Below, piece by piece: positions 1 to 9,371 of a stretch of 9,371 nucleotides of DNA; the stretch's first letter is position 1; each line of letters starts with the position of its first letter. The stretch is from positions 1 to 9,371 of the IMG/VR virus record IMGVR_UViG_3300017593_000278. One strand, written 5' to 3'. The position numbers were made by a program, and so were the translations under genes. The notes below the pieces were generated by a model. That model worked only from the letters and a program-made list of their open reading frames with translations. It did not search any database and had not been told where the DNA came from.

Positions 1-572
1 GCAGTTGCTTTATCTTTCTTCTCACTTGCTTTCTTAACAGCAATAAACACTTTTACGCCAAACAATTCAAACAAACTTTCAATTGTCTTTCTTCTCTCTA
101 TATATATATTTGATAAACCACCCTCGAACTTCTTATCAAAAGTCTCATAATTATTCTGTATATATTTTATTATTCCACCTTCAGTATCGACCCACAACGT
201 CTTATATCCAAGAGTCCCCCAAAACCATGCCTCTTGTAGCATAAATCTTGTTTTGCCTATTTCTGGTGGTGCGTAAAAACCAAATAGTTCATCTGAATTA
301 TACGGAAATCCATAGAAAGCTTTATTCATAACTTCCAAACTGCTAGGTAATTCCAAAAAATTTTCAATCCCATCTAATATTCTTTCAGCCTTCAACATAT
401 CCCTCACCTCTAATAATCTAACATGTTTACAATGTCCATGGGTTAAAAACCCAATGCAAGAACAAAAAGGTTCACCATTCCAAATAACAGCCGTATGGAT
501 ACCAGTGCTACCTTCAACTAATATCATCCTCATGTTCAGCCGTTTCATCCATATATGTTCCAATAACTTCAT
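1..572 (-). CDS. SWIM zinc-finger + RecA/RadB/KaiC-superfamily P-loop ATPase (C-terminus outside window; absent from ORF track)
   Basis: Manual translation gives an open frame from ATG 572 (GGTGA at 578-582, 5 nt spacer) to the window edge: MKLLEHIWMKRLNMRMILVEGSTGIHTAVIWNGEPFCSCIGFLTHGHCKHVRLLEVRDMLKAERILDGIENFLELPSSLEVMNKAFYGFPYNSDELFGFYAPPEIGKTRFMLQEAWFWGTLGYKTLWVDTEGG... It contains CxC-x8-CxH (SWIM-like), Walker A APPEIGKT, and the RecA-family hhhDTEG motif carrying the catalytic Glu. Confidence 0.85.
   Translation of the reverse strand, partial: MKLLEHIWMKRLNMRMILVEGSTGIHTAVIWNGEPFCSCIGFLTHGHCKHVRLLEVRDMLKAERILDGIENFLELPSSLEVMNKAFYGFPYNSDELFGFYAPPEIGKTRFMLQEAWFWGTLGYKTLWVDTEGGIIKYIQNNYETFDKKFEGGLSNIYIERRKTIESLFELFGVKVFIAVKKASEKKDKAT
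404..410 (-). promoter_or_regulatory. Internal Shine-Dalgarno GAGGTGA ahead of in-frame ATG 398
   Basis: Minus strand reads GAGGTGA-GGGAT-ATG. The heptamer and 5-nt spacer match those at six other gene starts in the window. Confidence 0.6.
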
Positions 573-933
573 ACGACTCACCATCCAATACCACATATTT
601 ACCAAGCTTCTTTTCGTACACTAAAAAATCATAGACAACCTCTGGGTATTTTGCAAGTGCTTTCACTGTTGCTATAGCATGCAATATGCCACCAACCAAC
701 ACAATATATATTTTGTCCTTATCATATTTAAAGCTTTCGGTATACCATGCATCGATGTTCTTCTTTATGCTCGTTATTGCTTTATTGACTAACGCTTTAT
801 TAGAGTAATCATAAATCACAGTATTTGTTAATTCCTTGACAATAACAATATCATTGACACCATCAAATGTACGTACAACCTCATCTGATATATTATATTT
901 CACCACAGAAGGTACAAATACCCATATAACCAC
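514..933 (-). CDS. Hypothetical ~139 aa alpha/beta (Rossmann-like) protein; possible CARF/Csx3/SAVED-like fold
   Basis: Start moved from 981 to GTG 933 because GAGGTGA (939-945) sits 5 nt upstream. The segment KIYIVLVGG-helix-FLVYEKKLGKYVVL resembles the strand-Gly-helix-hairpin core of Csx3/SAVED-type domains. The fold call is inference only. Confidence 0.7.
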   Translation of the reverse strand: MVIWVFVPSVVKYNISDEVVRTFDGVNDIVIVKELTNTVIYDYSNKALVNKAITSIKKNIDAWYTESFKYDKDKIYIVLVGGILHAIATVKALAKYPEVVYDFLVYEKKLGKYVVLDGESYEVIGTYMDETAEHEDDIS

Positions 934-943
934 ATCAATCACC

Positions 944-1585
944 TCACTCCGTATCTTTATCATATATAATCTGACTTGCAAATTTTGGTTGTGCTAATAT
1001 ATCCTCAAGTTGCTGAATTCTACTGTTTATCAAATTAACAGTATCTTCCCAAGAAATACCAGCTAATTTGTTCTCAGGCATTTCGACAATAGTTTGTTCA
1101 ACTGATAACAATTCCCTAACAACATATAACAATGTCAACTCCTTAACATTTTCGGGTAAATCAGTATGCCCATACCGATATGTAATAATTATTTCATCTC
1201 CACCCCAATCAACATCGAGAACCTTTATAAATATTTTTCCACTCTCAAGTAAAGTCCATCTATTTGTATCGTCTACCAATTCCCTATAAGAGTTACCAAA
1301 TAATACTTGCACACTTATAATTTGTGTAATCGCCTCTCTACTAAGAGTAATCGGAACACCTCTACCAACCAAAAATCCTGTTCGCCAAACACCCATATCA
1401 AATATTTCTTTAATTTCTTTAACTCTACCATTCCATGTGCTCGCTGTTAAATGGTCAACATTCTCCATAGCCCTAATAATACGCTTTATCAATTTTTCGT
1501 CAGAAAATGCACCTTCTACCCAATCAACATTCAAATATTCCCTCACATCATCTGGTGTTATATACAATTTTGCCACATTCACCAT
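944..1585 (-). CDS. Head-tail connector/adaptor (HK97 gp6 / SPP1 gp15-like)
   Basis: N-terminal YITPDDVREYL...SDEKLIKRIIRAMENVDHLT and C-terminal ITYRYGHTDLPENVKELTL are typical of gp6/gp15-type adaptors. It lies downstream of the capsid gene. GAGGTGA (1591-1597) supports ATG 1585. Confidence 0.8.
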   Translation of the reverse strand: MVNVAKLYITPDDVREYLNVDWVEGAFSDEKLIKRIIRAMENVDHLTASTWNGRVKEIKEIFDMGVWRTGFLVGRGVPITLSREAITQIISVQVLFGNSYRELVDDTNRWTLLESGKIFIKVLDVDWGGDEIIITYRYGHTDLPENVKELTLLYVVRELLSVEQTIVEMPENKLAGISWEDTVNLINSRIQQLEDILAQPKFASQIIYDKDTE

Positions 1586-1603
1586 ACCATTCACCTCAAA
1601 TAA

Positions 1604-1621
1604 TATTTAAAAAGAAAGAAA
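1604..1621 (-). terminator. Oligo-T tract (possible archaeal terminator) overlapping a TATA-like TTTAAATA
   Basis: Minus strand reads TAG-TTTCTTTCTTTTTAAATA directly after the stop of the gene that follows the MCP, in one of the few intergenic gaps. Confidence 0.45.
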
Positions 1622-1903
1622 CTAAAACTTCTTAATCACCAATACTTTATAACTCACTACAATATCCTGAGCTGAATCACTATTATTAATAGCCTTAACA
1701 TAAATAGTATGCAAATCTTCGGCAATTCGCACAAATTCAACAGACGCATCTGAAGTATCGGTTTTAATTCCAACAACAATTGCTACACTGTTACTACCAA
1801 TATCAAAACTCACAACACTTGAAGACCCAGCACCAACTGAACTTGCCGTAACTGTCCCCTCGACATAGTCAGCCCGAATAATATCTGGAAATTCCCTCAA
1901 CAT
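1622..1903 (-). CDS. Small beta-rich virion protein (candidate capsid decoration/cement), 93 aa
   Basis: GGGGTGA (1908-1914) precedes ATG 1903. The sequence is V/S/A/I-rich with alternating beta-strand patterns and directly follows the MCP. Function is inferred from position. Confidence 0.6.
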   Translation of the reverse strand: MLREFPDIIRADYVEGTVTASSVGAGSSSVVSFDIGSNSVAIVVGIKTDTSDASVEFVRIAEDLHTIYVKAINNSDSAQDIVVSYKVLVIKKF

Positions 1904-1932
1904 TTTATCACCCCAAATATTATTAAAAGGCA

Positions 1933-3123
1933 TCAAGCCTTAACAATATCTCTAATCTTTGCCTGAACTCTTAGGTTTCTTGCTACTACTTCTCCAAAGA
2001 ATGTGTAGATACCTCTTGTGGTTGTCTTGTTGTTAACAAGTGGGTTATCAATCTCATAGTATCTAGGTGGTTCTGCAACAGATATAGCAAGTCTTGGATA
2101 TCCATTTCCTTCAGGGTCTGATGTATCAAGTATATATAGCCTGTTTAGACCATTGCTAGAACTTCTATCAACAGGTGTATCTACTGCAGTTATGATAGGT
2201 ATTCCGAATATAGACATCACTTTCATTCCAACGTCAACACCCTCAGGTGTCTGTACACCGTTAACACTACCTCTTGCATATCTCATCTCAGTCTTTGCAT
2301 ATCTTGTAAGTGTCTCGTACATGCTAAGTAGGTATGCATATGTCTTTGCACCAGTAAGCATAACATTTGGTCTTCCCCCTCTTTCCCAAACTTCAGCAAG
2401 AGCATCAAGTATTAAATCTGTAGTAAGTGCCTGTCCACCTGATTCGGATGAATATTTAACAACTGAATCGTATATACTATCTGCACTTCTATCAACTCCG
2501 TAAACATCTTCTCTACCTGCAACCTGTAGTGCTGATGCCTCTGCAGAGCTTGAAACTATTCTGTCTAGTGGAAGTATGTAGTTTGTGGTTGTTGATGGGT
2601 CTTCACAATCTGAACCATCTGTAAAGTTCTCACCGAAATATTTTCTCATTATCATCATGTTTATTAGCTTTACAAAATTCTGGGCATACTCTTTCCTAAG
2701 TCTGTCAACTGTAACGACTGCATCATCTTTACTCCTACTCTTTAATAGCATTTTCTTACTAATTTCAAACGGAAGTGCCGCCTTTTTAATATCTGCTTCC
2801 ATTCTAGCATACTCTGGAAGTACTGCAGATGGAAGAGTATCACCTTCGCCAAACACAATGTTCGCATACGTAGTTGGTAAAGCTACTTCAACTCTCCAAC
2901 CACTTCTTGGAAAATCTGTTTTTGGTAACATACCAAAAGCATTTGCTTCTTTATTGAGTAAAGACCACACTAGCATACCATAAGTCTTGTTTAGATAATC
3001 AGCACCAAGTGTAGTTTGTATTGCACCTGTACCCTTTGTTATTCCTTCAACATCCCAAAATACACCACTCTCTCCTTCAAGATACCACTTTTTTAGCTCA
3101 GCTAAACTCAATATTCTATACAT
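1933..3123 (-). CDS. Major capsid protein (HK97 fold), ~396 aa
   Basis: Size and position follow protease and scaffold. The N-terminal YGMLVWSLLNKEANAFGMLPKTDFPRSGWRV resembles, from memory, MCPs of archaeal tailed viruses (halovirus/magrovirus type). It also has FGIPII and a C-terminal GEVVARNLRVQAKIRDI. GAGGTGA (3129-3135) supports ATG 3123. Confidence 0.88.
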   Translation of the reverse strand: MYRILSLAELKKWYLEGESGVFWDVEGITKGTGAIQTTLGADYLNKTYGMLVWSLLNKEANAFGMLPKTDFPRSGWRVEVALPTTYANIVFGEGDTLPSAVLPEYARMEADIKKAALPFEISKKMLLKSRSKDDAVVTVDRLRKEYAQNFVKLINMMIMRKYFGENFTDGSDCEDPSTTTNYILPLDRIVSSSAEASALQVAGREDVYGVDRSADSIYDSVVKYSSESGGQALTTDLILDALAEVWERGGRPNVMLTGAKTYAYLLSMYETLTRYAKTEMRYARGSVNGVQTPEGVDVGMKVMSIFGIPIITAVDTPVDRSSSNGLNRLYILDTSDPEGNGYPRLAISVAEPPRYYEIDNPLVNNKTTTRGIYTFFGEVVARNLRVQAKIRDIVKA

Positions 3124-3128
3124 TTCTT

Positions 3129-3626
3129 TCACCTCTTAAGTAATTCAAACACCTTATCAGGATTTCCTCTACCGTCCAAAATCTCAAAAATCTCATCGTC
3201 TATACCTTTTTCGATATCAATCGCATCAACAACTGGAGTCTCTGAAACATCATCAAATTCCTCTTTTTCTTCAGTTTCGCCCTTTTTAACTTCTTCATCT
3301 TTGGCTTCCTCTTTAACTTCCTCTTCAGCTTTCTTTTCGACTTCCGCTTTCTCAATTGTTTCCTCTGCTTCCTTATCAGTTACCTCTTCGGTAACTTCAT
3401 TGGTATTGTCTTCAGCTTTCTCAACTTTATCTTCCTCAACTTTCTCCTCAATCTTTTCTTCAACATCTGTTTTAATCCCTTTCTTAATCTCGTCGAAATT
3501 ATCAATCATAACAGATATTAATCCTTTCTGAACTTCGACCAACTTATCTATAACATCCTCTATATCTTGTAGTTTTTTCTCAATTTCCTTTAATTTTTCC
3601 TCAACAATCTCAAAATTTTCACCCAT
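3129..3626 (-). CDS. Acidic coiled-coil capsid scaffolding protein, ~165 aa
   Basis: Extremely E/K/D-rich with an N-terminal heptad pattern (VEEKLKEIEKKLQDIEDVIDKL). It sits immediately upstream of the MCP. GAGGTG (3634-3639) supports ATG 3626. Confidence 0.7.
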   Translation of the reverse strand: MGENFEIVEEKLKEIEKKLQDIEDVIDKLVEVQKGLISVMIDNFDEIKKGIKTDVEEKIEEKVEEDKVEKAEDNTNEVTEEVTDKEAEETIEKAEVEKKAEEEVKEEAKDEEVKKGETEEKEEFDDVSETPVVDAIDIEKGIDDEIFEILDGRGNPDKVFELLKR

Positions 3627-3637
3627 TCCCAAACACC

Positions 3638-3874
3638 TCAATTCTTTTTCTTATCCCGTTCATTCAACCAAACTTGTTTTCTTCGTCTTGCTCCAACTGT
3701 TCTGGGGTCATCAGGCTCAGATTCAGATGGACGTTTCGTTTTCATTTGATGATAAAATATCCACCCACATAATCTCCGAGCCGTATCTTCATCAACACCA
3801 TTCTCATTCATCACACGTTCAACACAATGGTAAAACCATTTCTTTGGTGGTCTCAAATCATTTGCTTTCATCAC
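3638..3874 (-). CDS. Small basic protein with a CV-x17-C helical module (head-associated, unknown function)
   Basis: The ORF fills the gap between protease and scaffold. WFYHCVERVMNENGVDEDTARRLCGWI resembles the protease C-terminal segment. The start could be GTG 3874 or ATG 3871. Confidence 0.7.
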   Translation of the reverse strand: MMKANDLRPPKKWFYHCVERVMNENGVDEDTARRLCGWIFYHQMKTKRPSESEPDDPRTVGARRRKQVWLNERDKKKN

Positions 3875-5120
3875 CCTCTCTACGAAATTTACCTTTTACC
3901 ATTTCCTTTGCTTTTTCAATTTCGTCAACAAAAATTTCTAGCTCAGTTAGAGATAATTCAATATCATCACCGAACATATCGACAACAAAATGATATTCAT
4001 CTCCTTTCTTAACATACCTCTTTATATATGCACATATACGTTTAGCACTTTCCAAACTCTTACCAGTTGCCATCATGTATCTAACACAACCACAAAATCT
4101 TGACTTGGTATCAGGGTCATCTGGACATGACATTTCTTTAAAATGGCTACCTTCCATATACTTCTCTTTATCCACTTTAGCTTTGATAAGATTTACAAGC
4201 TCTTCTACCTTTTCTTTCAATCCAATAGTATCAACACGTTTCTCGCCAACCGCTTCGTATACACTATCAACAGCATCTGGAGAATTGTTTATTTCAATAG
4301 TTGTATCAATTCCCTCATCATCCTTTTTAATATCTTCCATTTTATTTTCTTCTCCCAACGATACCACCACCAACAAAGATTTCATAACATCTAACAATAC
4401 ATCTACTTTAACATCATTTGACGCACCACTATGTAATATGTTATGCACTACACCTTTATAAATATCCACTATTCTCGATACTTCTTCATCTTCACTCACC
4501 GCATTTAGACGAGTATTGAAAATTTCAAGCATATCACCAAAATCAAGACTCTTTAAAATACTTTCATAATCTAGTTCAATTTGTCCTTTAGCCAAAGAAA
4601 CTTCTTCTATTTTAGCATAAGGATTTCTAGGACTACCAACAATGCTAATTTCACTAATTTCAATTTGCTCAAATTCTCTAATAACAACATCATCTTTTAA
4701 AACATCCTTTGATTTTCCTTTCCCACCAATCGAAAATGCTGTAAGTTTGCCCTCTTTAATTGCATTCCAAACCGCATTATCTGTAGCATAATCATCGAAT
4801 ATTTGTGCAACAATATATACACCCCATTTACTTGTATCTGGATGTTTCATTATTTCCCACTGCACAATTTTACCAACCTTAACAATAGAATGTGCAAAAT
4901 GAACATCCCCACCACGCTTCATGTATTTAATCATTGCAGACTTCAATACACTAATTGGTAAAATATCATTATCTTTATCAACAACTTCAACACTAGCCCA
5001 ACCACTAACAAGTCTATCCGATTCATTAGTAACAGTTATTTTCATAGATTCTGTAACATATTTATTCGCATCAATGACATCACCATTATCAATTTCTTGT
5101 TTAATAATATCTTCACTCAT
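3858..5120 (-). CDS. Prohead maturation serine protease (HK97 gp4/XkdF-like) with a long C-terminal extension
   Basis: RLVSGWASVEVVDKDNDI, a candidate catalytic His (FAHS..VGKI), VWNAIKEGKLTAFSIGG (catalytic Ser motif) and ISEISIVGSPRNPYA. GAGGTGA (5126-5132) supports ATG 5120. Confidence 0.9.
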   Translation of the reverse strand: MSEDIIKQEIDNGDVIDANKYVTESMKITVTNESDRLVSGWASVEVVDKDNDILPISVLKSAMIKYMKRGGDVHFAHSIVKVGKIVQWEIMKHPDTSKWGVYIVAQIFDDYATDNAVWNAIKEGKLTAFSIGGKGKSKDVLKDDVVIREFEQIEISEISIVGSPRNPYAKIEEVSLAKGQIELDYESILKSLDFGDMLEIFNTRLNAVSEDEEVSRIVDIYKGVVHNILHSGASNDVKVDVLLDVMKSLLVVVSLGEENKMEDIKKDDEGIDTTIEINNSPDAVDSVYEAVGEKRVDTIGLKEKVEELVNLIKAKVDKEKYMEGSHFKEMSCPDDPDTKSRFCGCVRYMMATGKSLESAKRICAYIKRYVKKGDEYHFVVDMFGDDIELSLTELEIFVDEIEKAKEMVKGKFRREGDESK

Positions 5121-5125
5121 AATAT

Positions 5126-5716
5126 TCACCTCTTTCTAACACCTCTAACAACACATCTACACCGTGGATGAACCGTATATTCCCTACTTTTACCCCCACC
5201 GATACTAGCTATGTACTCCCGTAACATTTCAATTTCAACACCACCCTTTGTAAGCTCTGCAACTCTCCTACATTTCTCACATACTTTATCATCTTTTTTA
5301 TTAACAAACTCAAATTTGTTAATACCCAATCTCTCTTGATAATACATAACTCTAACACTATTTGCTAAATTACTTAATTCAGTCATCGCTATTGTCTCTG
5401 CCTTATCTCTATCCAATCCAATATTTACCAATTCTTCAATAACTTTACCTTTCCTAACAAACCATCCATTGACGAATGAATGTACCAAAACTTCATTAAC
5501 TTTTTTAGCTACCTCTTCATCTAAATCGGTATAAAACTTCCACCTATCAACTTTAAATAATGCCCATTCTCGCATTCCTTTTGTAACTTTTGTAATATAA
5601 TATGTTCTACCTTTTTCCAATATATCCAAATCATCATCATCTAATACAGTAGTAAACCACGAATATCCACCAATTAATGACTTCCGCACAAAATTTCTTA
5701 TGTTATCAATAATCAC
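5126..5716 (-). CDS. Mu gpF / SPP1 gp7-like minor head morphogenesis protein
   Basis: AETIAMTELSN, DDKVCEKC and C-terminal HPRCRC are hallmark motifs. It lies between portal and protease. The GTG start overlaps the portal TGA, with GGAGGT upstream. Confidence 0.88.
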   Translation of the reverse strand: MIIDNIRNFVRKSLIGGYSWFTTVLDDDDLDILEKGRTYYITKVTKGMREWALFKVDRWKFYTDLDEEVAKKVNEVLVHSFVNGWFVRKGKVIEELVNIGLDRDKAETIAMTELSNLANSVRVMYYQERLGINKFEFVNKKDDKVCEKCRRVAELTKGGVEIEMLREYIASIGGGKSREYTVHPRCRCVVRGVRKR

Positions 5717-7371
5717 GCCCCTTCAACCTCCTTATCTGACGCATCTCTACGCTTTCTCCTAACTATCTGTGGTTGTCCTTGATATCTGTCAGCTGTACCA
5801 CTTGACATTCTACCTCTTTCGGGTTCTCCTTGAAATCTATCCTCTGGTTTATTCATATTAATCTTATTATCTTCTTGTTTTGTTGTCTTTTCTTCAGATT
5901 TAACAAATTTGAAATCTATACCGTCTTCACCCTCAAACATTATAGCATCATAACCAAGTGTTTTCATTGCCTGAGCTTTCTGTATTCTTAACATCTCCCT
6001 CTCAATCTTTGCCTTCATATCTTTCTCTTCATGGTGAACCAACTTAATCTCCCAATCTTCAATCTCCAACTGTTTAGCAATCCATTTCAATATTCCTTCG
6101 TTCAATCTATATTGCTCCCTATCCAATACCCTATTTGTAACAGTTATCTGAAGTCCCTCATTAGCCAAACCAACCCCAGTTGAATAATCAGCTTGGAATA
6201 ATGGCATTACACCAAAGGTAGCACCAATACTTCTTCTTAATTCATTTCTATATTCAATGAAATTGATATCATCAGCCCTATAACTCATATCTATAAATTC
6301 CGCTGGTCTCGTGCTTTTCATCAAATTAGGATTATCAATCGCAAACGGTATTAAGCTATATGGGTTCTTTGCTCTCTCCTCTTCAATACGTTTCCACATC
6401 TTGTAAACTTTAGCTGGATTTCCTCGTATTATCAGTAAACCAGCTGGTGGTCTTCTCAAAGAGTAACTATATAATACATATTCATCCATTTTCATCAAAA
6501 TCATAACCTTTTGCCACACAGACATTAACAACGGTGTACCATATCCCACACTATGCTCACTCTTTGTATCAAAATATACTTCATCCCCAGAATAATATAC
6601 TATAATATTACTATTAAGCTTCGCTCTGAAATGAGCCTCAAACATCTCAGTGCCACAAATTGGACATTTAATATTCCCTTTCTCATAATCATCTGGTTTA
6701 ACAGTTATAAGTTTATTCCTGTGTTTTGGACAAACCATCAAATAATTCCCATTATCATCTCTACCATAAGAACCAAATCTATTCATAATTATTTGCATCA
6801 CAAACGGTGAACCCCTAATAATCTCTTTGATTTCACTTTTTACAACTTTACCATTTTTAAAATAATATTTCTTATGAGCAACAACAAAAGCATTATCATA
6901 AACATTTAAATCGACTGCAAACCCATATAACAAATCGAGTAACTTCTGTTTGTTTTCATTTATATTACCCATCCACTCCATTAATTTATTATACTCATTT
7001 TCATCAGGTTCTACTATATTTGTAGAACCACATTTCTCACATTTATCAACACGCTCTTCATATACAGCTCCACAATCCTCACACTTACTAGCAAATTTAG
7101 GTTTTAAATATATACCATTTTTAATTGTCTCATCAACAATACTCCTAATTATTGTTTTAACAACATCACTATTATTAAATAAATATCTCGCTATTTTTAA
7201 TGTTGTCAAATTTGGCTCTCTAAACGACTGGTCATATGGAATAATCTTTTTAAAATCATCCAATACTGGTCTAGGATTCATTCCACCATATATCGCAAAA
7301 TACTCATCATCACTTGATACATTATCCCCTTTTGTGAACAGTTTATCTTTAATATATTCAATAATACCCAT
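5713..7371 (-). CDS. Portal protein with two zinc-ribbon insertions, ~552 aa
   Basis: Portal-like segments DLNVYDNAFV, GYGTPLLMS and FIEYRNELRRSIGATFGVMP. It is the first gene of the portal-gpF-protease-MCP order. Inserts are CEDC..CEKC and CPKH..CPIC. GAGGTGA (7377-7383) supports ATG 7371. Confidence 0.88.
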   Translation of the reverse strand: MGIIEYIKDKLFTKGDNVSSDDEYFAIYGGMNPRPVLDDFKKIIPYDQSFREPNLTTLKIARYLFNNSDVVKTIIRSIVDETIKNGIYLKPKFASKCEDCGAVYEERVDKCEKCGSTNIVEPDENEYNKLMEWMGNINENKQKLLDLLYGFAVDLNVYDNAFVVAHKKYYFKNGKVVKSEIKEIIRGSPFVMQIIMNRFGSYGRDDNGNYLMVCPKHRNKLITVKPDDYEKGNIKCPICGTEMFEAHFRAKLNSNIIVYYSGDEVYFDTKSEHSVGYGTPLLMSVWQKVMILMKMDEYVLYSYSLRRPPAGLLIIRGNPAKVYKMWKRIEEERAKNPYSLIPFAIDNPNLMKSTRPAEFIDMSYRADDINFIEYRNELRRSIGATFGVMPLFQADYSTGVGLANEGLQITVTNRVLDREQYRLNEGILKWIAKQLEIEDWEIKLVHHEEKDMKAKIEREMLRIQKAQAMKTLGYDAIMFEGEDGIDFKFVKSEEKTTKQEDNKINMNKPEDRFQGEPERGRMSSGTADRYQGQPQIVRRKRRDASDKEVEGA

Positions 7372-7376
7372 CAATA

Positions 7377-7706
7377 TCACCTCGTTTTATCATACCTATC
7401 AAATATTTTTTCATACTTATCCCGAATCCTAAAATACTCTTTCATAAATTCCTCATCATGACTTTTCCAATTTTCATACCCACGTTCTCTAAGATTGTAA
7501 TGAGCCATTTCATGCATGATAATTTCAAATAATCCCCATCTAGCTAATGCCGTTTGTCCACCCTTAATATATAAAATATTATGCCCCTTAACAGTACGGG
7601 GCATGAAACCTGCTCTAGGATATTTAACTCTATCATTACTATGAACAATTTCTATTTTCCATCCCAACTGTTTTAATATTTTCCTGATTTCACTAATAAT
7701 ATTCAT
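7377..7706 (-). CDS. Small zincin metalloprotease (SprT/WLM/YgjP-like), 109 aa
   Basis: IIMHEMAH (HExxH) is followed by SHDEEF, which supplies the third His ligand as in SprT/YgjP-like minigluzincins. Confidence 0.8.
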   Translation of the reverse strand: MNIISEIRKILKQLGWKIEIVHSNDRVKYPRAGFMPRTVKGHNILYIKGGQTALARWGLFEIIMHEMAHYNLRERGYENWKSHDEEFMKEYFRIRDKYEKIFDRYDKTR

Positions 7707-7707
7707 T

Positions 7708-8490
7708 TTAACCTACCTCAATATCATGTGCCCACAACATCTTATTACTACGAGATACACCAAACATCCAAAACTTTGTTTGAGATTTTAAGCCCATTTT
7801 CGCAACATAATCATCATCAGACACCATTGTACCATTAATAAGAATCGTAATATTATTCCAATCCAAACGACTAAACGTATGGAAATGCCCCAATAAAACA
7901 ACATCGAACTGCTCATCTATGCCACCACTATACCAACGCATTGCTTTCTGAATAATACCGTAGAGAGGTATGTTTTGATACATATAAACTTGGTCGCCAT
8001 GAATTAATAAATACTTCCAACCTCTTATACTTGCTATATGATACCAATCTCCAACATGTACATCAACTTGATTATTGTGCCTATATATATCTCTTAACCT
8101 TTTATACAACATAAGTTCCCAATTCGTAATACCCTTTCTATTCGCTCTACCATGATTCCCATAAACACAATGAATATCAACTTTCCTATACCTGTCCAAC
8201 AGACCTTCAGTAAACCAATCAAAAGTATCAACGAAAACATCAATTGCCTCATCTACATTCAAATCAGTATTGTACCCTTGCCCACCATATATAGCTTCAC
8301 CATCTATCATATCACCAAGTAAGAATATGTGAATATCAGGCATTTTATAAGCCTTATTAATTTCATTCTTAAAATCTAAAACACTCCTCAATAATTTACC
8401 CATACGCTGTCTAAACACATCCACATTATATGATTTAGTTTTCTTACCAACATGCGTATCACTAATAACAACAACGGTACTTATCTCCAT
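7708..8490 (-). CDS. Calcineurin-like metallophosphoesterase, ~260 aa
   Basis: All five motifs are present: SDTH, GDMIDG, GNHG, HGD, GHFH. Start moved to ATG 8490, which overlaps the upstream TAA (TAATG) and has GGTGG upstream. Confidence 0.9.
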   Translation of the reverse strand: MEISTVVVISDTHVGKKTKSYNVDVFRQRMGKLLRSVLDFKNEINKAYKMPDIHIFLLGDMIDGEAIYGGQGYNTDLNVDEAIDVFVDTFDWFTEGLLDRYRKVDIHCVYGNHGRANRKGITNWELMLYKRLRDIYRHNNQVDVHVGDWYHIASIRGWKYLLIHGDQVYMYQNIPLYGIIQKAMRWYSGGIDEQFDVVLLGHFHTFSRLDWNNITILINGTMVSDDDYVAKMGLKSQTKFWMFGVSRSNKMLWAHDIEVG

Positions 8491-8879
8491 TATCCACCAC
8501 CAACCATATATACAAAATAATAGACGATTAAAATAATCGTCAACACTATACTCCAATATCTCAATATTTTATCCTGAAGTTTATCGCTATATGACTGCTC
8601 ACGCTCAATATTATCTAGTTTATTTTTCAATAACATTATATCATTATTGTGCTCCAGTTTTGTTACAAATCGTTCCGAATAATTATTATATTTCACAAAC
8701 TTGCGTTCAACCACTTTATCCAAATCATGTTGTTCATCGACCATTTCTTTTACAAGTGTTGATAATTCTTTAATATCTTCTCTTATATTACCAATAGCTT
8801 CCTTGATTTCTCCCCGAAATCGTTCAAAATCACGTTCAAGTTTCAGCACACGTTCATCAATATCAGGCATGTTCATCAT
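8490..8879 (-). CDS. Coiled-coil protein with a single C-terminal transmembrane helix (holin/XhlA-like architecture)
   Basis: Heptad-rich charged N-terminus (IDERVLKLERDFERF...) and a hydrophobic tail WSIVLTIILIVYYFVYMV. Function is inferred. Confidence 0.65.
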   Translation of the reverse strand: MMNMPDIDERVLKLERDFERFRGEIKEAIGNIREDIKELSTLVKEMVDEQHDLDKVVERKFVKYNNYSERFVTKLEHNNDIMLLKNKLDNIEREQSYSDKLQDKILRYWSIVLTIILIVYYFVYMVGGG

Positions 8880-8901
8880 CTCGCCTATAATTTATACTCC
8901 A

Positions 8902-8915
8902 ATATTTATAAATAT
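8902..8915 (-). promoter_or_regulatory. TATA box (TTTATAAA) within a perfect 14-bp palindrome ATATTTATAAATAT
   Basis: It lies in a 36-nt intergenic gap, centred ~29 nt upstream of ATG 8879, a spacing compatible with an archaeal promoter and a nearly leaderless transcript. Confidence 0.5.
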
Positions 8916-9371
8916 CTAACCCCAAATCACATAAATCGGTTCATACTTCCATTTTCCTATTCTACCATGTTTATATGTTGAAAATTTACCTGTTTGAGGC
9001 TCATACATATATACCTCTGGAGTCCCATCATTCTTTCTTGCGATAAATATATTCCATGCATGGTATCCAATATGACCAACATCGTCAACAATCCGCCCAA
9101 CTGCAATTCCGACATTATTTATACCGTATACAAATGGAACAAATCCAGCAAAACTAACTGCAAAATTATCGCAATCATATTCTTCCAGTCTATATTTACT
9201 CCATTTCACCATGTCATACTTGATTATTTTCATCATCGTCTCAAATTTCGGATATTTATACGAACCATCCCAAAGATATGTAATACACAAAGATTCACAT
9301 GCCTTCAGCATTTTCAATAAATCATCTGCTTTAATTACATATTTCTCCCTAACCTTTGTCCTTAAGAAAAC
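8916..9371 (-). CDS. Papain/transglutaminase-like cysteine protease (MOA agglutinin C-terminal-like); N-terminus outside window
   Basis: YDCDNFA (Cys), GYHAWNIF (His) and YEPQTG (Glu) form a candidate catalytic triad. The frame stays open past 9317 to the window edge (VFLRTKVREKYVIKADDLLKM...). Confidence 0.8.
   Translation of the reverse strand, partial: VFLRTKVREKYVIKADDLLKMLKACESLCITYLWDGSYKYPKFETMMKIIKYDMVKWSKYRLEEYDCDNFAVSFAGFVPFVYGINNVGIAVGRIVDDVGHIGYHAWNIFIARKNDGTPEVYMYEPQTGKFSTYKHGRIGKWKYEPIYVIWG

What the first reader, a model, noticed from the sequence alone, without database searches (positions are those of the whole stretch)
1..572. Gene missed by the ORF track: SWIM zinc finger fused in frame to a RecA/RadB-like ATPase
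Seen: one uninterrupted frame carries CSC-x8-CKH (423-464), then APPEIGKT and LWVDTEG. Known: RadA has an N-terminal helix-hairpin-helix domain, RadB has none, and bacterial Sms has a C4 finger. SWIM fingers usually partner SNF2 helicases or nucleases, or occur as separate SWIM proteins that bind Rad51 paralogues (eukaryotic SWS1-SWSAP1 Shu complex). Inference: this may be a viral single-chain SWIM + RecA-paralogue recombination mediator, analogous to the Shu complex.
Basis: partly seen in the sequence, partly recalled or inferred. Interest (0 to 1): 0.75.

Follow-up and report, generated by a model that had tools for sequence, protein, structure and literature searches.

The report
SWIM finger fused to viral RadA/RadB-like ATPase
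The left end of this viral contig holds the first half of a real, conserved gene in which a small zinc finger (SWIM) is fused to a RecA-type DNA ATPase; it opens the DNA replication and recombination gene block of a group of uncultured, probably archaeal, tailed viruses, and its exact job (strand pairing or DNA unwinding) is untested.

Summary
On the minus strand, one open frame runs from 620 to the contig end. It carries CSC-x8-CKH (464-423), APPEIGKT (272-249) and LWVDTEG (197-177). The ORF list omits it only because it runs off the end of the contig. A 98.3%-identical contig supplies the full 364-aa protein and differs from the window only by synonymous changes inside the ORF.

About 60 homologue clusters exist. 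In 32 aligned full-length members the four SWIM ligands, the Walker A Gly-Lys, the Glu of DTEG and the Walker B Asp are invariant. Profile and fold searches place the ATPase nearest archaeal RadA/RadB and the Rad51 family, not DnaB or KaiC.

In relatives the gene comes directly after the head genes. It is followed by a PriS-PriL primase, PolB, an OB-fold protein, a Cas4-like nuclease and an ERCC4 nuclease.

- **Best reading (about 0.5):** the virus's own ATP-dependent strand-pairing or annealing protein for recombination-dependent replication, with SWIM in the place of RadA's N-terminal domain.
- **Main rival (about 0.3):** a ring helicase like bacterial RadA/Sms.
- **Shu-complex mediator idea:** no specific support.

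"RadA-like" ATPases of archaeal tailed viruses are known. I found no description of the SWIM fusion, so I rate this a new variant of a known kind.

The parts
1..548 (-). 5' half (codons 1-182 of 364) of the SWIM-RadA/RadB-like ATPase gene. It runs off the contig end, and bases 1-2 are a partial codon.
   Evidence: The frame is open. It is 100% identical to residues 6-182 of the full-length P0001. L003 shows only synonymous differences.
408..533 (-). SWIM zinc-finger domain, residues 6-47: three beta-strands followed by helices.
   Evidence: AF2 models give strands 6-12, 17-23 and 26-29, then helices 32-37 and 41-47, with pLDDT 86-92. Pfam SWIM scores 13.3 bits for this protein, and 15 of 32 homologues hit it, best E 6.2e-6.
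423..464 (-). Metal-ligand signature CSC-x8-CKH (C29, C31, C40, H42).
   Evidence: Direct translation. Invariant in 32 of 32 and 13 of 13 homologues. The spacer is 8 residues in 22 of 32 and 9 in 7 of 32.
351..407 (-). Linker between the finger and the ATPase core, residues 48-66. Its length varies, it carries a loosely conserved hydrophobic-acidic patch, and it has no FxxA motif.
   Evidence: Low pLDDT of about 56. Linker sequences and 0 of 32 with F..A.
249..272 (-). Walker A / P-loop, APPEIGKT (G98 and K99 invariant).
177..197 (-). Strand LWVDTEG carrying the RecA/Rad51-type catalytic Glu (E123 and G124 invariant).
   Evidence: It aligns to RecA's FIDAEHA region.
3..62 (-). First strand and Lys-rich tip (KKASEKKDK) of a family-specific beta-hairpin inserted between the DTEG strand and Walker B. 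The second strand lies beyond the contig end.
   Evidence: AF2 strands 166-172 and 185-192, with tip pLDDT 64-78. The alignment shows a variable Lys-rich insert.
514..548 (-). 35-nt overlap of the gene's start with the end of the upstream 155-aa gene (514-981).
   Evidence: The relatives L022 and L023 have the same overlap.

Best explanation
Window 548-1 (minus strand) is the first half of a 364-aa protein of an uncultured, probably archaeal, tailed virus. I take this identification as near certain.

**Architecture**
- An N-terminal SWIM zinc finger.
- A flexible linker.
- A catalytically intact RecA-superfamily ATPase core closest to archaeal RadA/RadB and the Rad51 family. It carries its own conserved loops (QQNxPAK and HAS.NPANPY) at what I infer to be the positions of the DNA-binding loops L1 and L2, plus a Lys-rich beta-hairpin insert.
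- A conserved C-terminal helical tail.

**Most likely function (inferred)**
It is the virus's own ATP-dependent strand-pairing or annealing protein. It would assemble on single-stranded DNA that the neighbouring Cas4-like nuclease exposes and the neighbouring OB-fold protein covers. It would then pair that DNA with a homologous duplex, so the adjacent primase and PolB can start recombination-dependent replication and build concatemers. The ERCC4 nuclease would trim or resolve the branches. The SWIM finger sits where RadA/Rad51 carry their N-terminal DNA-binding domain, so it would provide a second DNA or partner contact.

The sequence, the conservation, the fold and the gene neighbourhood are shown. 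Oligomeric state, DNA pairing and zinc binding are inferred.
For: **Real, conserved gene**
- A full-length identical protein exists (P0001), and 64 representative clusters were found.
- Only synonymous differences separate the window from a 98.3%-identical contig.
- The AF2 model has pLDDT 90.2 and pTM 0.90.
- The SWIM ligands and ATPase catalytic residues are invariant in 32 of 32.

**RadA/RadB/Rad51 affinity**
- PDB profile search, E-values: RadA 1.6e-14, DMC1 2.5e-11, RAD51B 1e-10, UvsX 2.6e-10, KaiC 8e-10, RadB 1.3e-9. No DnaB, gp4 or Sms appears in the best 60.
- NCBIfam: RadB 32 of 32 (best 1.7e-20), RadA 26 of 32, DnaB-type 2 of 32.
- The top 50 Foldseek PDB hits are all RAD51, RadA, DMC1 or RAD51 paralogues.
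- The full-length protein passes the Pfam AAA_24 cut-off, 29.0 against 27 bits. From memory, AAA_24 is the family that holds phage Sak4.
- Per its abstract, phage Sak4 is a RadB-like single-strand annealing protein stimulated by its own SSB (PMC5928155, listed).

**Recombination context**
- The order ATPase, PriS-PriL primase, PolB, OB-fold protein, Cas4-like nuclease, ERCC4+HhH nuclease holds in loci with 25-52% GC.
- The link to ERCC4 and an OB-fold protein persists where no primase or PolB was annotated next to the gene (L028).
- Magroviruses encode both an MCM helicase and a "RadA-like ATPase" (PMC5434244). The best viral fold match is a RecA-like ATPase of an uncultured archaeal virus, 34% identical, E 7e-29.

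**Functionally critical loops**
- Inteins sit at three or more sites inside the two family-specific loop motifs.
Against: - No biochemical data exist for any member.
- The RadA/Rad51 polymerisation motif FxxA is absent from the linker (0 of 32), so filament formation is not assured.
- In about 40 kb of a 47-kb relative I found no other helicase. That leaves room for this protein to be the replicative helicase.
- Against viral structures, phage DnaB-like helicases score about as well as phage RecA/UvsX-like proteins, E 1e-11 to 1e-9.
- The conserved His in HAS, where Rad51/RadA carry Gln, and the invariant Arg residues in the hairpin after the GG motif are features I recall from ring helicases and RecA rather than Rad51. 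I did not verify the alignment register.
- I could not confirm that the best viral fold match comes from a magrovirus.
Confidence: 0.5

Rival explanations
1. It is a ring-shaped (hexameric) RecA-fold DNA helicase, like bacterial RadA/Sms or DnaB/T7 gp4. It would serve as the replicative or branch-migrating helicase of these viruses and work directly with the primase and PolB encoded next to it. The zinc finger would act as the N-terminal partner- or DNA-binding module.
For: - The gene order ATPase, primase, polymerase is conserved.
- No MCM, SF3 or DnaB-type gene and no other strict Walker A ORF was found in about 40 kb of a 47-kb relative, nor within 10 kb of the gene in most loci.
- A zinc finger followed by a RecA-like core is also the layout of bacterial RadA/Sms. 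The sms model is hit by 22 of 32 members, best E 3e-7.
- PHROG DnaB-like hit at E 8.6e-5.
- Many phage DnaB-like helicases appear among the viral fold matches.
- A phage RecA-like protein has been shown to be a 5'-3' helicase (PMC8965321, title and abstract).
- FxxA is absent.
Against: - Every sequence-profile and PDB fold ranking puts RadA/RadB/Rad51 first.
- DnaB_C is hit by only 4 of 32 members and DnaB NCBIfam models by 2 of 32.
- The KNRFG motif (0 of 32), the Lon-like domain and the DnaB N-terminal domain are all missing.
- The PHROG hit covers only the P-loop region, residues 57-120.
- Magroviruses carry a RadA-like ATPase alongside MCM.
- No genome was seen complete: about 7 kb of the 47-kb contig stayed unread.
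Confidence: 0.3
2. This is the first reader's idea: a single-chain counterpart of the SWIM protein plus Rad51-paralogue mediator (Shu complex, SWS1-SWSAP1). It would not pair DNA itself. It would load or stabilise the host's RadA filament on viral DNA.
For: - A SWIM finger and a Rad51-paralogue-like core are combined in one chain.
- RAD51 paralogues (RAD51B, RAD51D, XRCC3) are among the very best fold matches.
- RadB, the archaeal paralogue, is the model that every member hits.
- No second viral recombinase was seen, so a host RadA partner is conceivable.
Against: - The ATPase residues are fully conserved.
- There is no specific similarity to Shu or SWS1 components: PSY3 at E 0.026 in one member, and Ala at His+3 in 5 of 32.
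- The SWIM-only model finds no significant structural neighbour at all.
- The viral module already looks self-sufficient, with its own OB-fold (putative ssDNA-binding) protein, nucleases, primase and polymerase.
- The host is unknown.
Confidence: 0.1
3. It is not a true fusion or not this kind of gene. Either two genes were joined by an assembly error, or the ATPase is the DNA-packaging terminase of the neighbouring head module.
For: - The gene directly follows the head genes.
- No terminase was recognised in the window.
- One relative (L019) has the finger split by a frameshift.
Against: - The fusion is continuous in an independent 98.3%-identical contig and in more than 40 homologues from many samples.
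- Separate large terminase genes exist in relatives: L034 19089-20504 and L019 8151-9563.
- The fold is Rad51-like, not terminase-like.
Confidence: 0.02

Closest known systems
"RadA-like" or "RecA/RadB-like" ATPases annotated in archaeal tailed viruses (magroviruses, haloarchaeal and nanohaloarchaeal viruses)
   Same: - A viral RecA-superfamily ATPase inside a replication block with PolB, an archaeo-eukaryotic primase, an ssDNA-binding protein and nucleases (PMC5434244; figure legend of bioRxiv 10.1101/2025.02.15.638363).
- The best viral fold match is such a protein from an uncultured archaeal virus: 34% identity, E 7e-29.
   Different: - Neither paper mentions a SWIM finger (0 occurrences in the one I searched for it).
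- That 305-aa match is too short to hold the finger, or its start was called too late.
- tblastn with three family members found nothing in 50,697 deposited phage and archaeal-virus records.
Archaeal RadA and RadB (Rad51-family recombinase and its paralogue)
   Same: - Walker A, the DTEG strand, Walker B and the GG..H..R region.
- The best profile and fold matches.
   Different: - RadA has a helix-hairpin-helix N-terminal domain and an FxxA polymerisation motif. Here a SWIM finger stands in that place and FxxA is absent.
- RadB has no N-terminal domain.
- Scores lie far below the equivalog cut-offs: 22 bits against 172 for the window's protein.
- The family has its own loop motifs, a Lys-rich hairpin insert and a C-terminal tail.
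Phage Sak4 (RadB-like, core-only single-strand annealing protein; from memory a member of Pfam AAA_24)
   Same: - A virus-encoded, RadB-like ATPase core.
- The full-length protein passes the AAA_24 cut-off, and 28 of 32 members hit the model.
- A cognate single-strand-binding protein is encoded nearby, as for Sak4 (PMC5928155 abstract).
   Different: - From memory, Sak4 is bacterial-phage, shorter, and has no zinc finger.
- Here the sequence affinity to RadA/RadB models is stronger than to AAA_24.
Bacterial RadA/Sms
   Same: - An N-terminal zinc finger followed by a RecA-like ATPase.
- The sms model is hit by 22 of 32 members.
   Different: - From memory, Sms has a C4 finger, a KNRFG motif and a C-terminal Lon-like domain, and forms hexameric helicase rings.
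- Here the finger is CxC..CxH, KNRFG occurs in 0 of 32, and the protein ends without a Lon-like domain.
Shu complex / SWS1-SWSAP1 (eukaryotic SWIM protein bound to Rad51 paralogues)
   Same: A SWIM finger associated with a Rad51-paralogue-like fold.
   Different: - There the two are separate polypeptides, with largely inactive ATPase sites (from memory).
- Here they form one chain with an intact ATPase.
- No specific sequence or fold similarity was found.

Membership tests
SWIM zinc finger (Pfam PF04434) | CxCxnCxH ligand signature | tested here: met
   CSC-x8-CKH at 464-423. Invariant in 32 of 32 and 13 of 13 homologues. Spacer of 6-13 residues, mostly 8.
SWIM zinc finger (Pfam PF04434) | Score at or above the Pfam gathering cut-off (19.6 bits) | tested here: inconclusive
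   The window's protein scores 13.3 bits, E 0.06, below the cut-off. 15 of 32 homologues match at E <= 0.1, best 6.2e-6.
SWIM zinc finger (Pfam PF04434) | Small beta-strands-plus-helix fold with the ligands at the last strand and the start of the helix | tested here: inconclusive
   AF2 predicts three strands then helices, with C29/C31 at the end of strand 3 and C40/H42 at a helix start. Foldseek with the 56-aa model found no significant PDB neighbour, best E 0.84.
SWIM zinc finger (Pfam PF04434) | Binds zinc | not testable with these tools
   Needs metal analysis of purified protein.
RecA/RadA/Rad51 superfamily ATPase core | Walker A, a catalytic Glu after the following strand, and a Walker B Asp | tested here: met
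   G98, K99, E123 and D216 are invariant in 32 of 32.
RecA/RadA/Rad51 superfamily ATPase core | RecA fold, closest to Rad51/RadA structures | tested here: met
   The top 50 Foldseek PDB hits are all RAD51, RadA, DMC1 or RAD51 paralogues, E 4e-13 to 2e-10. Profile against PDB: RadA 1.6e-14.
Archaeal RadA (recombinase proper) | N-terminal helix-hairpin-helix domain | tested here: not met
   The N-terminus is a SWIM finger. No HhH family was hit.
Archaeal RadA (recombinase proper) | FxxA polymerisation motif in the linker before the core | tested here: not met
   0 of 32 linkers contain F..A.
Archaeal RadA (recombinase proper) | Forms filaments on ssDNA and exchanges strands | not testable with these tools
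   Needs biochemistry or EM. No multimer prediction was available.
Archaeal RadB | Score at or above the TIGR02237 equivalog cut-off (172.4 bits) | tested here: not met
   22.1 bits for the window's protein. All 32 members hit the model, best E 1.7e-20, but no member's score was shown to reach the cut-off.
Archaeal RadB | Core-only protein without extra domains | tested here: not met
   The protein has a SWIM finger, a hairpin insert and a C-terminal tail.
Bacterial RadA/Sms | C4 zinc finger, KNRFG motif and C-terminal Lon-like domain | tested here: not met
   The finger is CxC..CxH. KNRFG occurs in 0 of 32. No Lon-like family was hit.
DnaB / SF4 replicative helicases | DnaB_C-type core and DnaB N-terminal domain | tested here: not met
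   DnaB_C is hit by 4 of 32 (best 6.7e-5), and DnaB NCBIfam models by 2 of 32. None appears in the best 60 PDB sequence hits or the top 50 PDB fold hits. The PHROG 19 hit covers only residues 57-120.
KaiC-like ATPases | Best match to KaiC models | tested here: not met
   KaiC models are hit by 25 of 32 (Pfam, best 1.6e-9) and 20 of 32 (NCBIfam, best 7.5e-8). They score below the RadB and RadA models. In the PDB search, KaiC is 8e-10 against RadA 1.6e-14.
Pfam AAA_24 (PF13479), from memory the family that holds phage Sak4 | Score at or above the gathering cut-off (27 bits) | tested here: met
   Full-length P0001 scores 29.0 bits, E 1.2e-6, and 28 of 32 members match. The half present in the window scores only 13.9 bits.
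Shu complex / SWS1-SWSAP1-type mediator | Specific similarity to Shu2/SWS1 (from memory: Ala three residues after the His) or to Csm2/Psy3/SWSAP1 | tested here: not met
   Ala at His+3 in 5 of 32. PSY3 at E 0.026 in one member. No Shu component appears in the top 50 fold hits.

The most novel reading that the evidence does not exclude
The fusion could be a "Rosetta stone". The SWIM finger would dock on a RecA-fold core in cis in the same way that eukaryotic SWS1/Shu2 docks on Rad51 paralogues in trans. In that case the SWIM plus Rad51-paralogue partnership of eukaryotic recombination would have an archaeal or archaeal-virus precedent, or even an ancestor. The simple viral protein could then be used to find out what the SWIM finger does in those complexes.
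Probability: 0.08. Interest if true: 0.8.

Novelty: new variant of a known kind. Interest (0 to 1): 0.5.

Why it matters
**The ATPase itself**
RecA-type ATPases of archaeal tailed viruses are routinely labelled "RadA-like", and I know of no study of any of them. This work shows three things:
- A whole family of about 60 clusters at 50% identity carries an ancestral, invariant SWIM finger in the place of RadA's N-terminal domain.
- The gene heads a conserved block of primase, PolB, an OB-fold protein, a Cas4-like nuclease and an ERCC4 nuclease.
- In at least one 47-kb relative, no other helicase is visible in the 40 kb read.

**How these viruses replicate**
Either these viruses start and maintain replication through their own recombinase, as phage T4 does, or a Rad51-like core has been turned into their replicative helicase. 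Each outcome would be informative about replication in archaeal viruses.

**The SWIM finger**
The fusion is a compact system for asking what a SWIM finger contributes to a Rad51-type ATPase. That question is still open for the eukaryotic Shu and SWS1-SWSAP1 complexes.

**Annotation**
Gene callers often start the gene at an internal Met and so lose the finger.

Tried and rejected
**Searches that found little or nothing**
- The word-indexed protein search with the 177-aa fragment found nothing. The exhaustive HMMER search was needed.
- The fragment alone gave only sub-threshold Pfam hits (SWIM 13.3 bits, AAA_24 13.9 bits) and no meaningful PDB sequence hit.
- tblastn of three family members against deposited phage and archaeal-virus genomes gave no match.
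A 10-sequence alignment found only four short MAG contigs, labelled Aenigmatarchaeota, "Hydrothermota" (two) and Pseudomonadota. That is too little to name a host.
- Foldseek with the SWIM domain alone gave nothing significant.
- Literature searches for a SWIM-RadA, RadB or KaiC fusion found none. This is absence from the searchable library only.

**Analyses I could not do**
No tool could fetch reference sequences, and I did not type them from memory. Profile and fold rankings stand in for it.
- Multimer prediction and inspection of model coordinates (SWIM-core contacts, zinc geometry). Neither was available.

**Ideas rejected**
- *Terminase.* Relatives have separate TerL genes.
- *Assembly chimera or frameshift.* Independent contigs and more than 40 homologues show one continuous frame.
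- *A large SWIM-less subfamily.* The SWIM-less database entries sit singly among SWIM-bearing sisters in the core tree. Several begin at an internal Met in the linker. Two "cut" entries have the whole finger upstream in frame.
Full report
**1. The observation**

All genes of the window lie on the minus strand. In one minus-strand frame there is no stop from position 620 to the contig end. Direct translation gives:
- CSCIGFLTHGHCKH at 464-423;
- APPEIGKT at 272-249;
- LWVDTEG at 197-177.

The piece of 177 residues has three cysteines, and all three are in the motif. Cysteine makes up 0.86% and histidine 1.5% of the window's 14 ORFs. From those figures I calculate about 3e-5 chance matches to C.C.{6,25}C.H in a piece of this size.

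The ORF list lacks the gene because it leaves out ORFs that run off an end. The window is the entire contig IMGVR_UViG_3300017593_000278.

The most likely start is the ATG at 548, for two reasons:
- It is the start of the database protein P0001.
- The 69%-identical relative P0066 starts at the matching Met, with the same 35-nt overlap onto the upstream gene.

**2. The rest of the gene, and evidence that it is a gene**

The exhaustive search of 1.84 billion representative proteins found 64 relatives. P0001 (364 aa) is 100% identical over the 177 residues searched (residues 6-182 of P0001). Its contig, L003 (1747 bp), is 98.3% identical to window 1-718 without gaps. Seven of the 12 differences fall in the target ORF, and all seven are synonymous. 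The window therefore holds codons 1-182 of 364.

With a 32-sequence alignment, AlphaFold2 gives a confident model, with mean pLDDT 90.2 and pTM 0.90. Its parts are:
- three strands and two helices at residues 6-47 (the finger);
- a low-confidence linker;
- a RecA-type alpha/beta core;
- a two-stranded hairpin insert at 166-192 with a Lys-rich tip;
- a helical tail at 342-357.

**3. Conservation of the fusion**

In 32 full-length homologues that are 25-39% identical to the window's protein, these residues are invariant:
- C29, C31, C40 and H42 (the SWIM ligands);
- G98 and K99 (Walker A);
- E123 and G124 (DTEG);
- D216 (Walker B);
- G283, G284, K292, R309 and R315.

Thirteen N-terminal segments translated directly from contigs again show the four ligands invariant.

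Among the 67 database proteins, some lack the finger or start inside it. Three results suggest most of these are late start calls rather than true losses:
- Two of the "cut" ones have the complete CxC..CxH upstream in the same frame: P0042 in L018 and P0067 in L028.
- In a tree of the ATPase cores, the seven "SWIM-less" proteins sit singly among SWIM-bearing sisters, which requires 7 changes.
- Several of them begin at a Met that lies in the linker of the SWIM-bearing proteins.

One relative (L019) has a frameshift between CSC and CKH. The finger therefore looks ancestral and nearly universal in this family.

**4. What the two domains are**

*The finger.*
- The signature and its spacing (8 residues in 22 of 32, 9 in 7 of 32) fit SWIM.
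- Pfam SWIM is hit by 15 of 32 members, best E 6.2e-6. The window's own protein scores 13.3 bits, below the 19.6-bit cut-off.
- A separate model of the finger (pLDDT 86.9) found no significant PDB neighbour. Fold confirmation is therefore lacking.

*The ATPase.*
- A profile of the family against PDB sequences gives these E-values: archaeal RadA 1.6e-14, DMC1 2.5e-11, RAD51B 1e-10, UvsX 2.6e-10, KaiC 8e-10, RadB 1.3e-9 and RecA about 1e-8 to 1e-6. The three top rows are artificial RecA concatemers.
- In NCBIfam the RadB model is hit by all 32 members (best 1.7e-20). RadA is hit by 26, sms by 22, KaiC models by up to 20 and DnaB-type models by 2. The window protein's RadB score (22 bits) is far below the 172-bit equivalog cut-off.
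- Pfam member counts are AAA_25 29, AAA_24 28, KaiC 25, Rad51 17, RecA 11 and DnaB_C 4. Full-length P0001 passes the AAA_24 cut-off.
- In Foldseek against the PDB, the first 50 hits are all RAD51, RadA, DMC1 or RAD51 paralogues.
- In Foldseek against viral models, the top hit is a "RecA-like ATPase-domain-containing protein" of an uncultured archaeal virus (34% identity, E 7e-29). A mix of phage RecA/UvsX-like and DnaB-like proteins follows at 1e-11 to 1e-9.

The protein is not a RadA, RadB or Sms orthologue:
- It has no HhH domain.
- It has no FxxA motif (0 of 32).
- It has no KNRFG motif (0 of 32).
- It has no Lon-like domain.

**5. Family-specific features**

Two motifs stand at what I infer to be the positions of the DNA-binding loops L1 and L2 of recombinases:
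- QQNxPAK, after Walker B;
- HAS.NPANPY, before the RGG motif.

Seven members carry inserts of 330-450 aa that appear to be inteins. They occupy at least three different sites, and all of them lie within these two motifs. From general knowledge, inteins favour functionally critical sites of replication and recombination proteins (see also PMC4760082, listed).

The region after the GG motif (GG....H..KR..Y.D.R.KK....YRRFWLVR) follows the Rad51 pattern. It also has invariant Arg residues in the hairpin that, as I recall, carries RecA's trans-acting lysines. I did not verify the alignment register, so this stays a lead.

**6. Genomic context**

*The window.* On the minus strand it carries, in order:
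- a lectin-like protein;
- a coiled-coil protein;
- a metallophosphatase;
- a 109-aa protein;
- the portal;
- a MuF-like protein;
- the prohead protease;
- the major capsid protein;
- an adaptor-like protein;
- a 155-aa protein;
- the target gene.

*Relative L022 (27 kb).* It has nearly the same order and shows what follows the target gene:
- a 362-aa primase with an archaeo-eukaryotic catalytic part and a PriL-type domain;
- an intein-bearing PolB;
- further downstream, a Cas4-like nuclease and an ERCC4+HhH nuclease.

In L003 the gene after the target is the same primase.

*Other viral contigs.* Thirteen IMG/VR contigs with 25-52% GC carry the family. In L009 and L018 the annotated order is ATPase, primase, PolB, OB-fold protein, Cas4-like nuclease, ERCC4 nuclease. 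In L028 the arrangement differs, but an ERCC4 nuclease and an OB-fold protein still sit next to the gene.

*The 47-kb contig.* Walking about 40 kb of it showed a clamp-like protein, ribonucleotide reductase, tail genes, head genes and this module. No MCM, SF3 or DnaB-type gene and no other strict Walker A ORF appeared. About 7 kb remained unread.

*Terminase.* Large terminase genes are separate in relatives.

*Host.* An archaeal host is an inference. It rests on the primase type, the clamp, the best viral fold match, one Aenigmatarchaeota MAG contig and the similarity of the module to published archaeal virus maps.

**7. Mechanism**

*Best explanation (about 0.5).* I infer the virus's own ATP-dependent strand-pairing or annealing protein for recombination-dependent replication and concatemer formation. 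The nuclease, OB-fold protein, primase, polymerase and branch-nuclease genes beside it would supply the other steps. The SWIM finger would replace RadA's N-terminal DNA-binding domain. In favour:
- the RadA/RadB/Rad51 affinity;
- the RadB-like phage annealing protein Sak4, which works with its own SSB (PMC5928155);
- the coexistence of MCM and a RadA-like ATPase in magroviruses (PMC5434244).

*Main rival (about 0.3).* A ring helicase in the manner of bacterial RadA/Sms or DnaB. In favour:
- the gene order;
- the apparent lack of another helicase;
- the missing FxxA motif;
- the zinc-finger-plus-core layout;
- a phage RecA-like protein that is a 5'-3' helicase (PMC8965321).

*Artefact or terminase readings.* I regard these as refuted.

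**8. Novelty**

"RadA-like" or "RecA/RadB-like" ATPases in archaeal tailed viruses are published. I found no description of the SWIM fusion. No homologue turned up in deposited virus genomes either. I rate the finding a new variant of a known kind, with moderate interest.

Noticed in passing
window 8916-9317 (-): A 133-aa ORF with a ricin-type beta-trefoil lectin C-terminal domain (Pfam Lectin_C_term, E 8e-8), upstream of the head genes. It might be a carbohydrate-binding virion or host-recognition protein.
   Followed up: no
window 7708-8556 (-); L022 3142-3933; L034 15340-15981: A calcineurin-like metallophosphatase sits two genes upstream of the portal in the window and in the relatives L022 and L023. 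L034 also carries one, near its terminase gene.
   Followed up: partly
window 5713-7380 (-): The portal protein (PHROG 18178, E 7e-40) has weak zinc-ribbon hits at residues 73-122 and 215-244, and holds 7 of the window's 27 cysteines.
   Followed up: no
window 1-9371: GC skew is very strong and uniform (-0.29 to -0.54, once -0.15) at 30-39% GC, and every gene lies on the minus strand. The coding strand is therefore markedly G-over-C rich.
   Followed up: no
P0006, P0027, P0029, P0035, P0038, P0053, P0054; L017 4136-6193: Seven family members (and probably the 685-aa ORF of L017, which I did not analyse) carry inserts of 330-450 aa that appear to be inteins. The inserts use at least three sites, all inside the two family-specific motifs QQNxPAK and HAS.NPANPY. 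PolB of L022 and the ribonucleotide reductase of L034 also carry inteins.
   Followed up: partly
L019 9950-11049: In this 52%-GC relative the SWIM finger is split by a frameshift between CSC and CKH. This could be an assembly error, a pseudogene or a real two-piece gene.
   Followed up: partly
L018 18032-20709 and L034 11206-11808: A set of 7-deazaguanine (queuosine/archaeosine-type) synthesis genes lies just after the replication module: QueC, a radical-SAM enzyme, a PTPS-family protein (QueD-like) and GTP cyclohydrolase I. This suggests DNA modification in these viruses.
   Followed up: no
P0042/L018, P0067/L028, P0039, P0044 and the SWIM-less entries: Public gene calls for this family often start inside or after the finger, in several cases at a Met in the linker. 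In L018 and L028 the full finger lies upstream in frame. Database proteins therefore under-report the fusion.
   Followed up: yes
window 5126-5716 (-) versus L022 5917-5981: The window has a separate 196-aa MuF-like gene between the portal and the protease. The otherwise syntenic relative L022 has no gene at that place.
   Followed up: no
L028 11737-13308: A 523-aa P-loop protein with no Pfam match lies four genes after the ATPase, in a relative where no primase or PolB was annotated next to the ATPase. It might be an unrecognised primase-helicase.
   Followed up: partly
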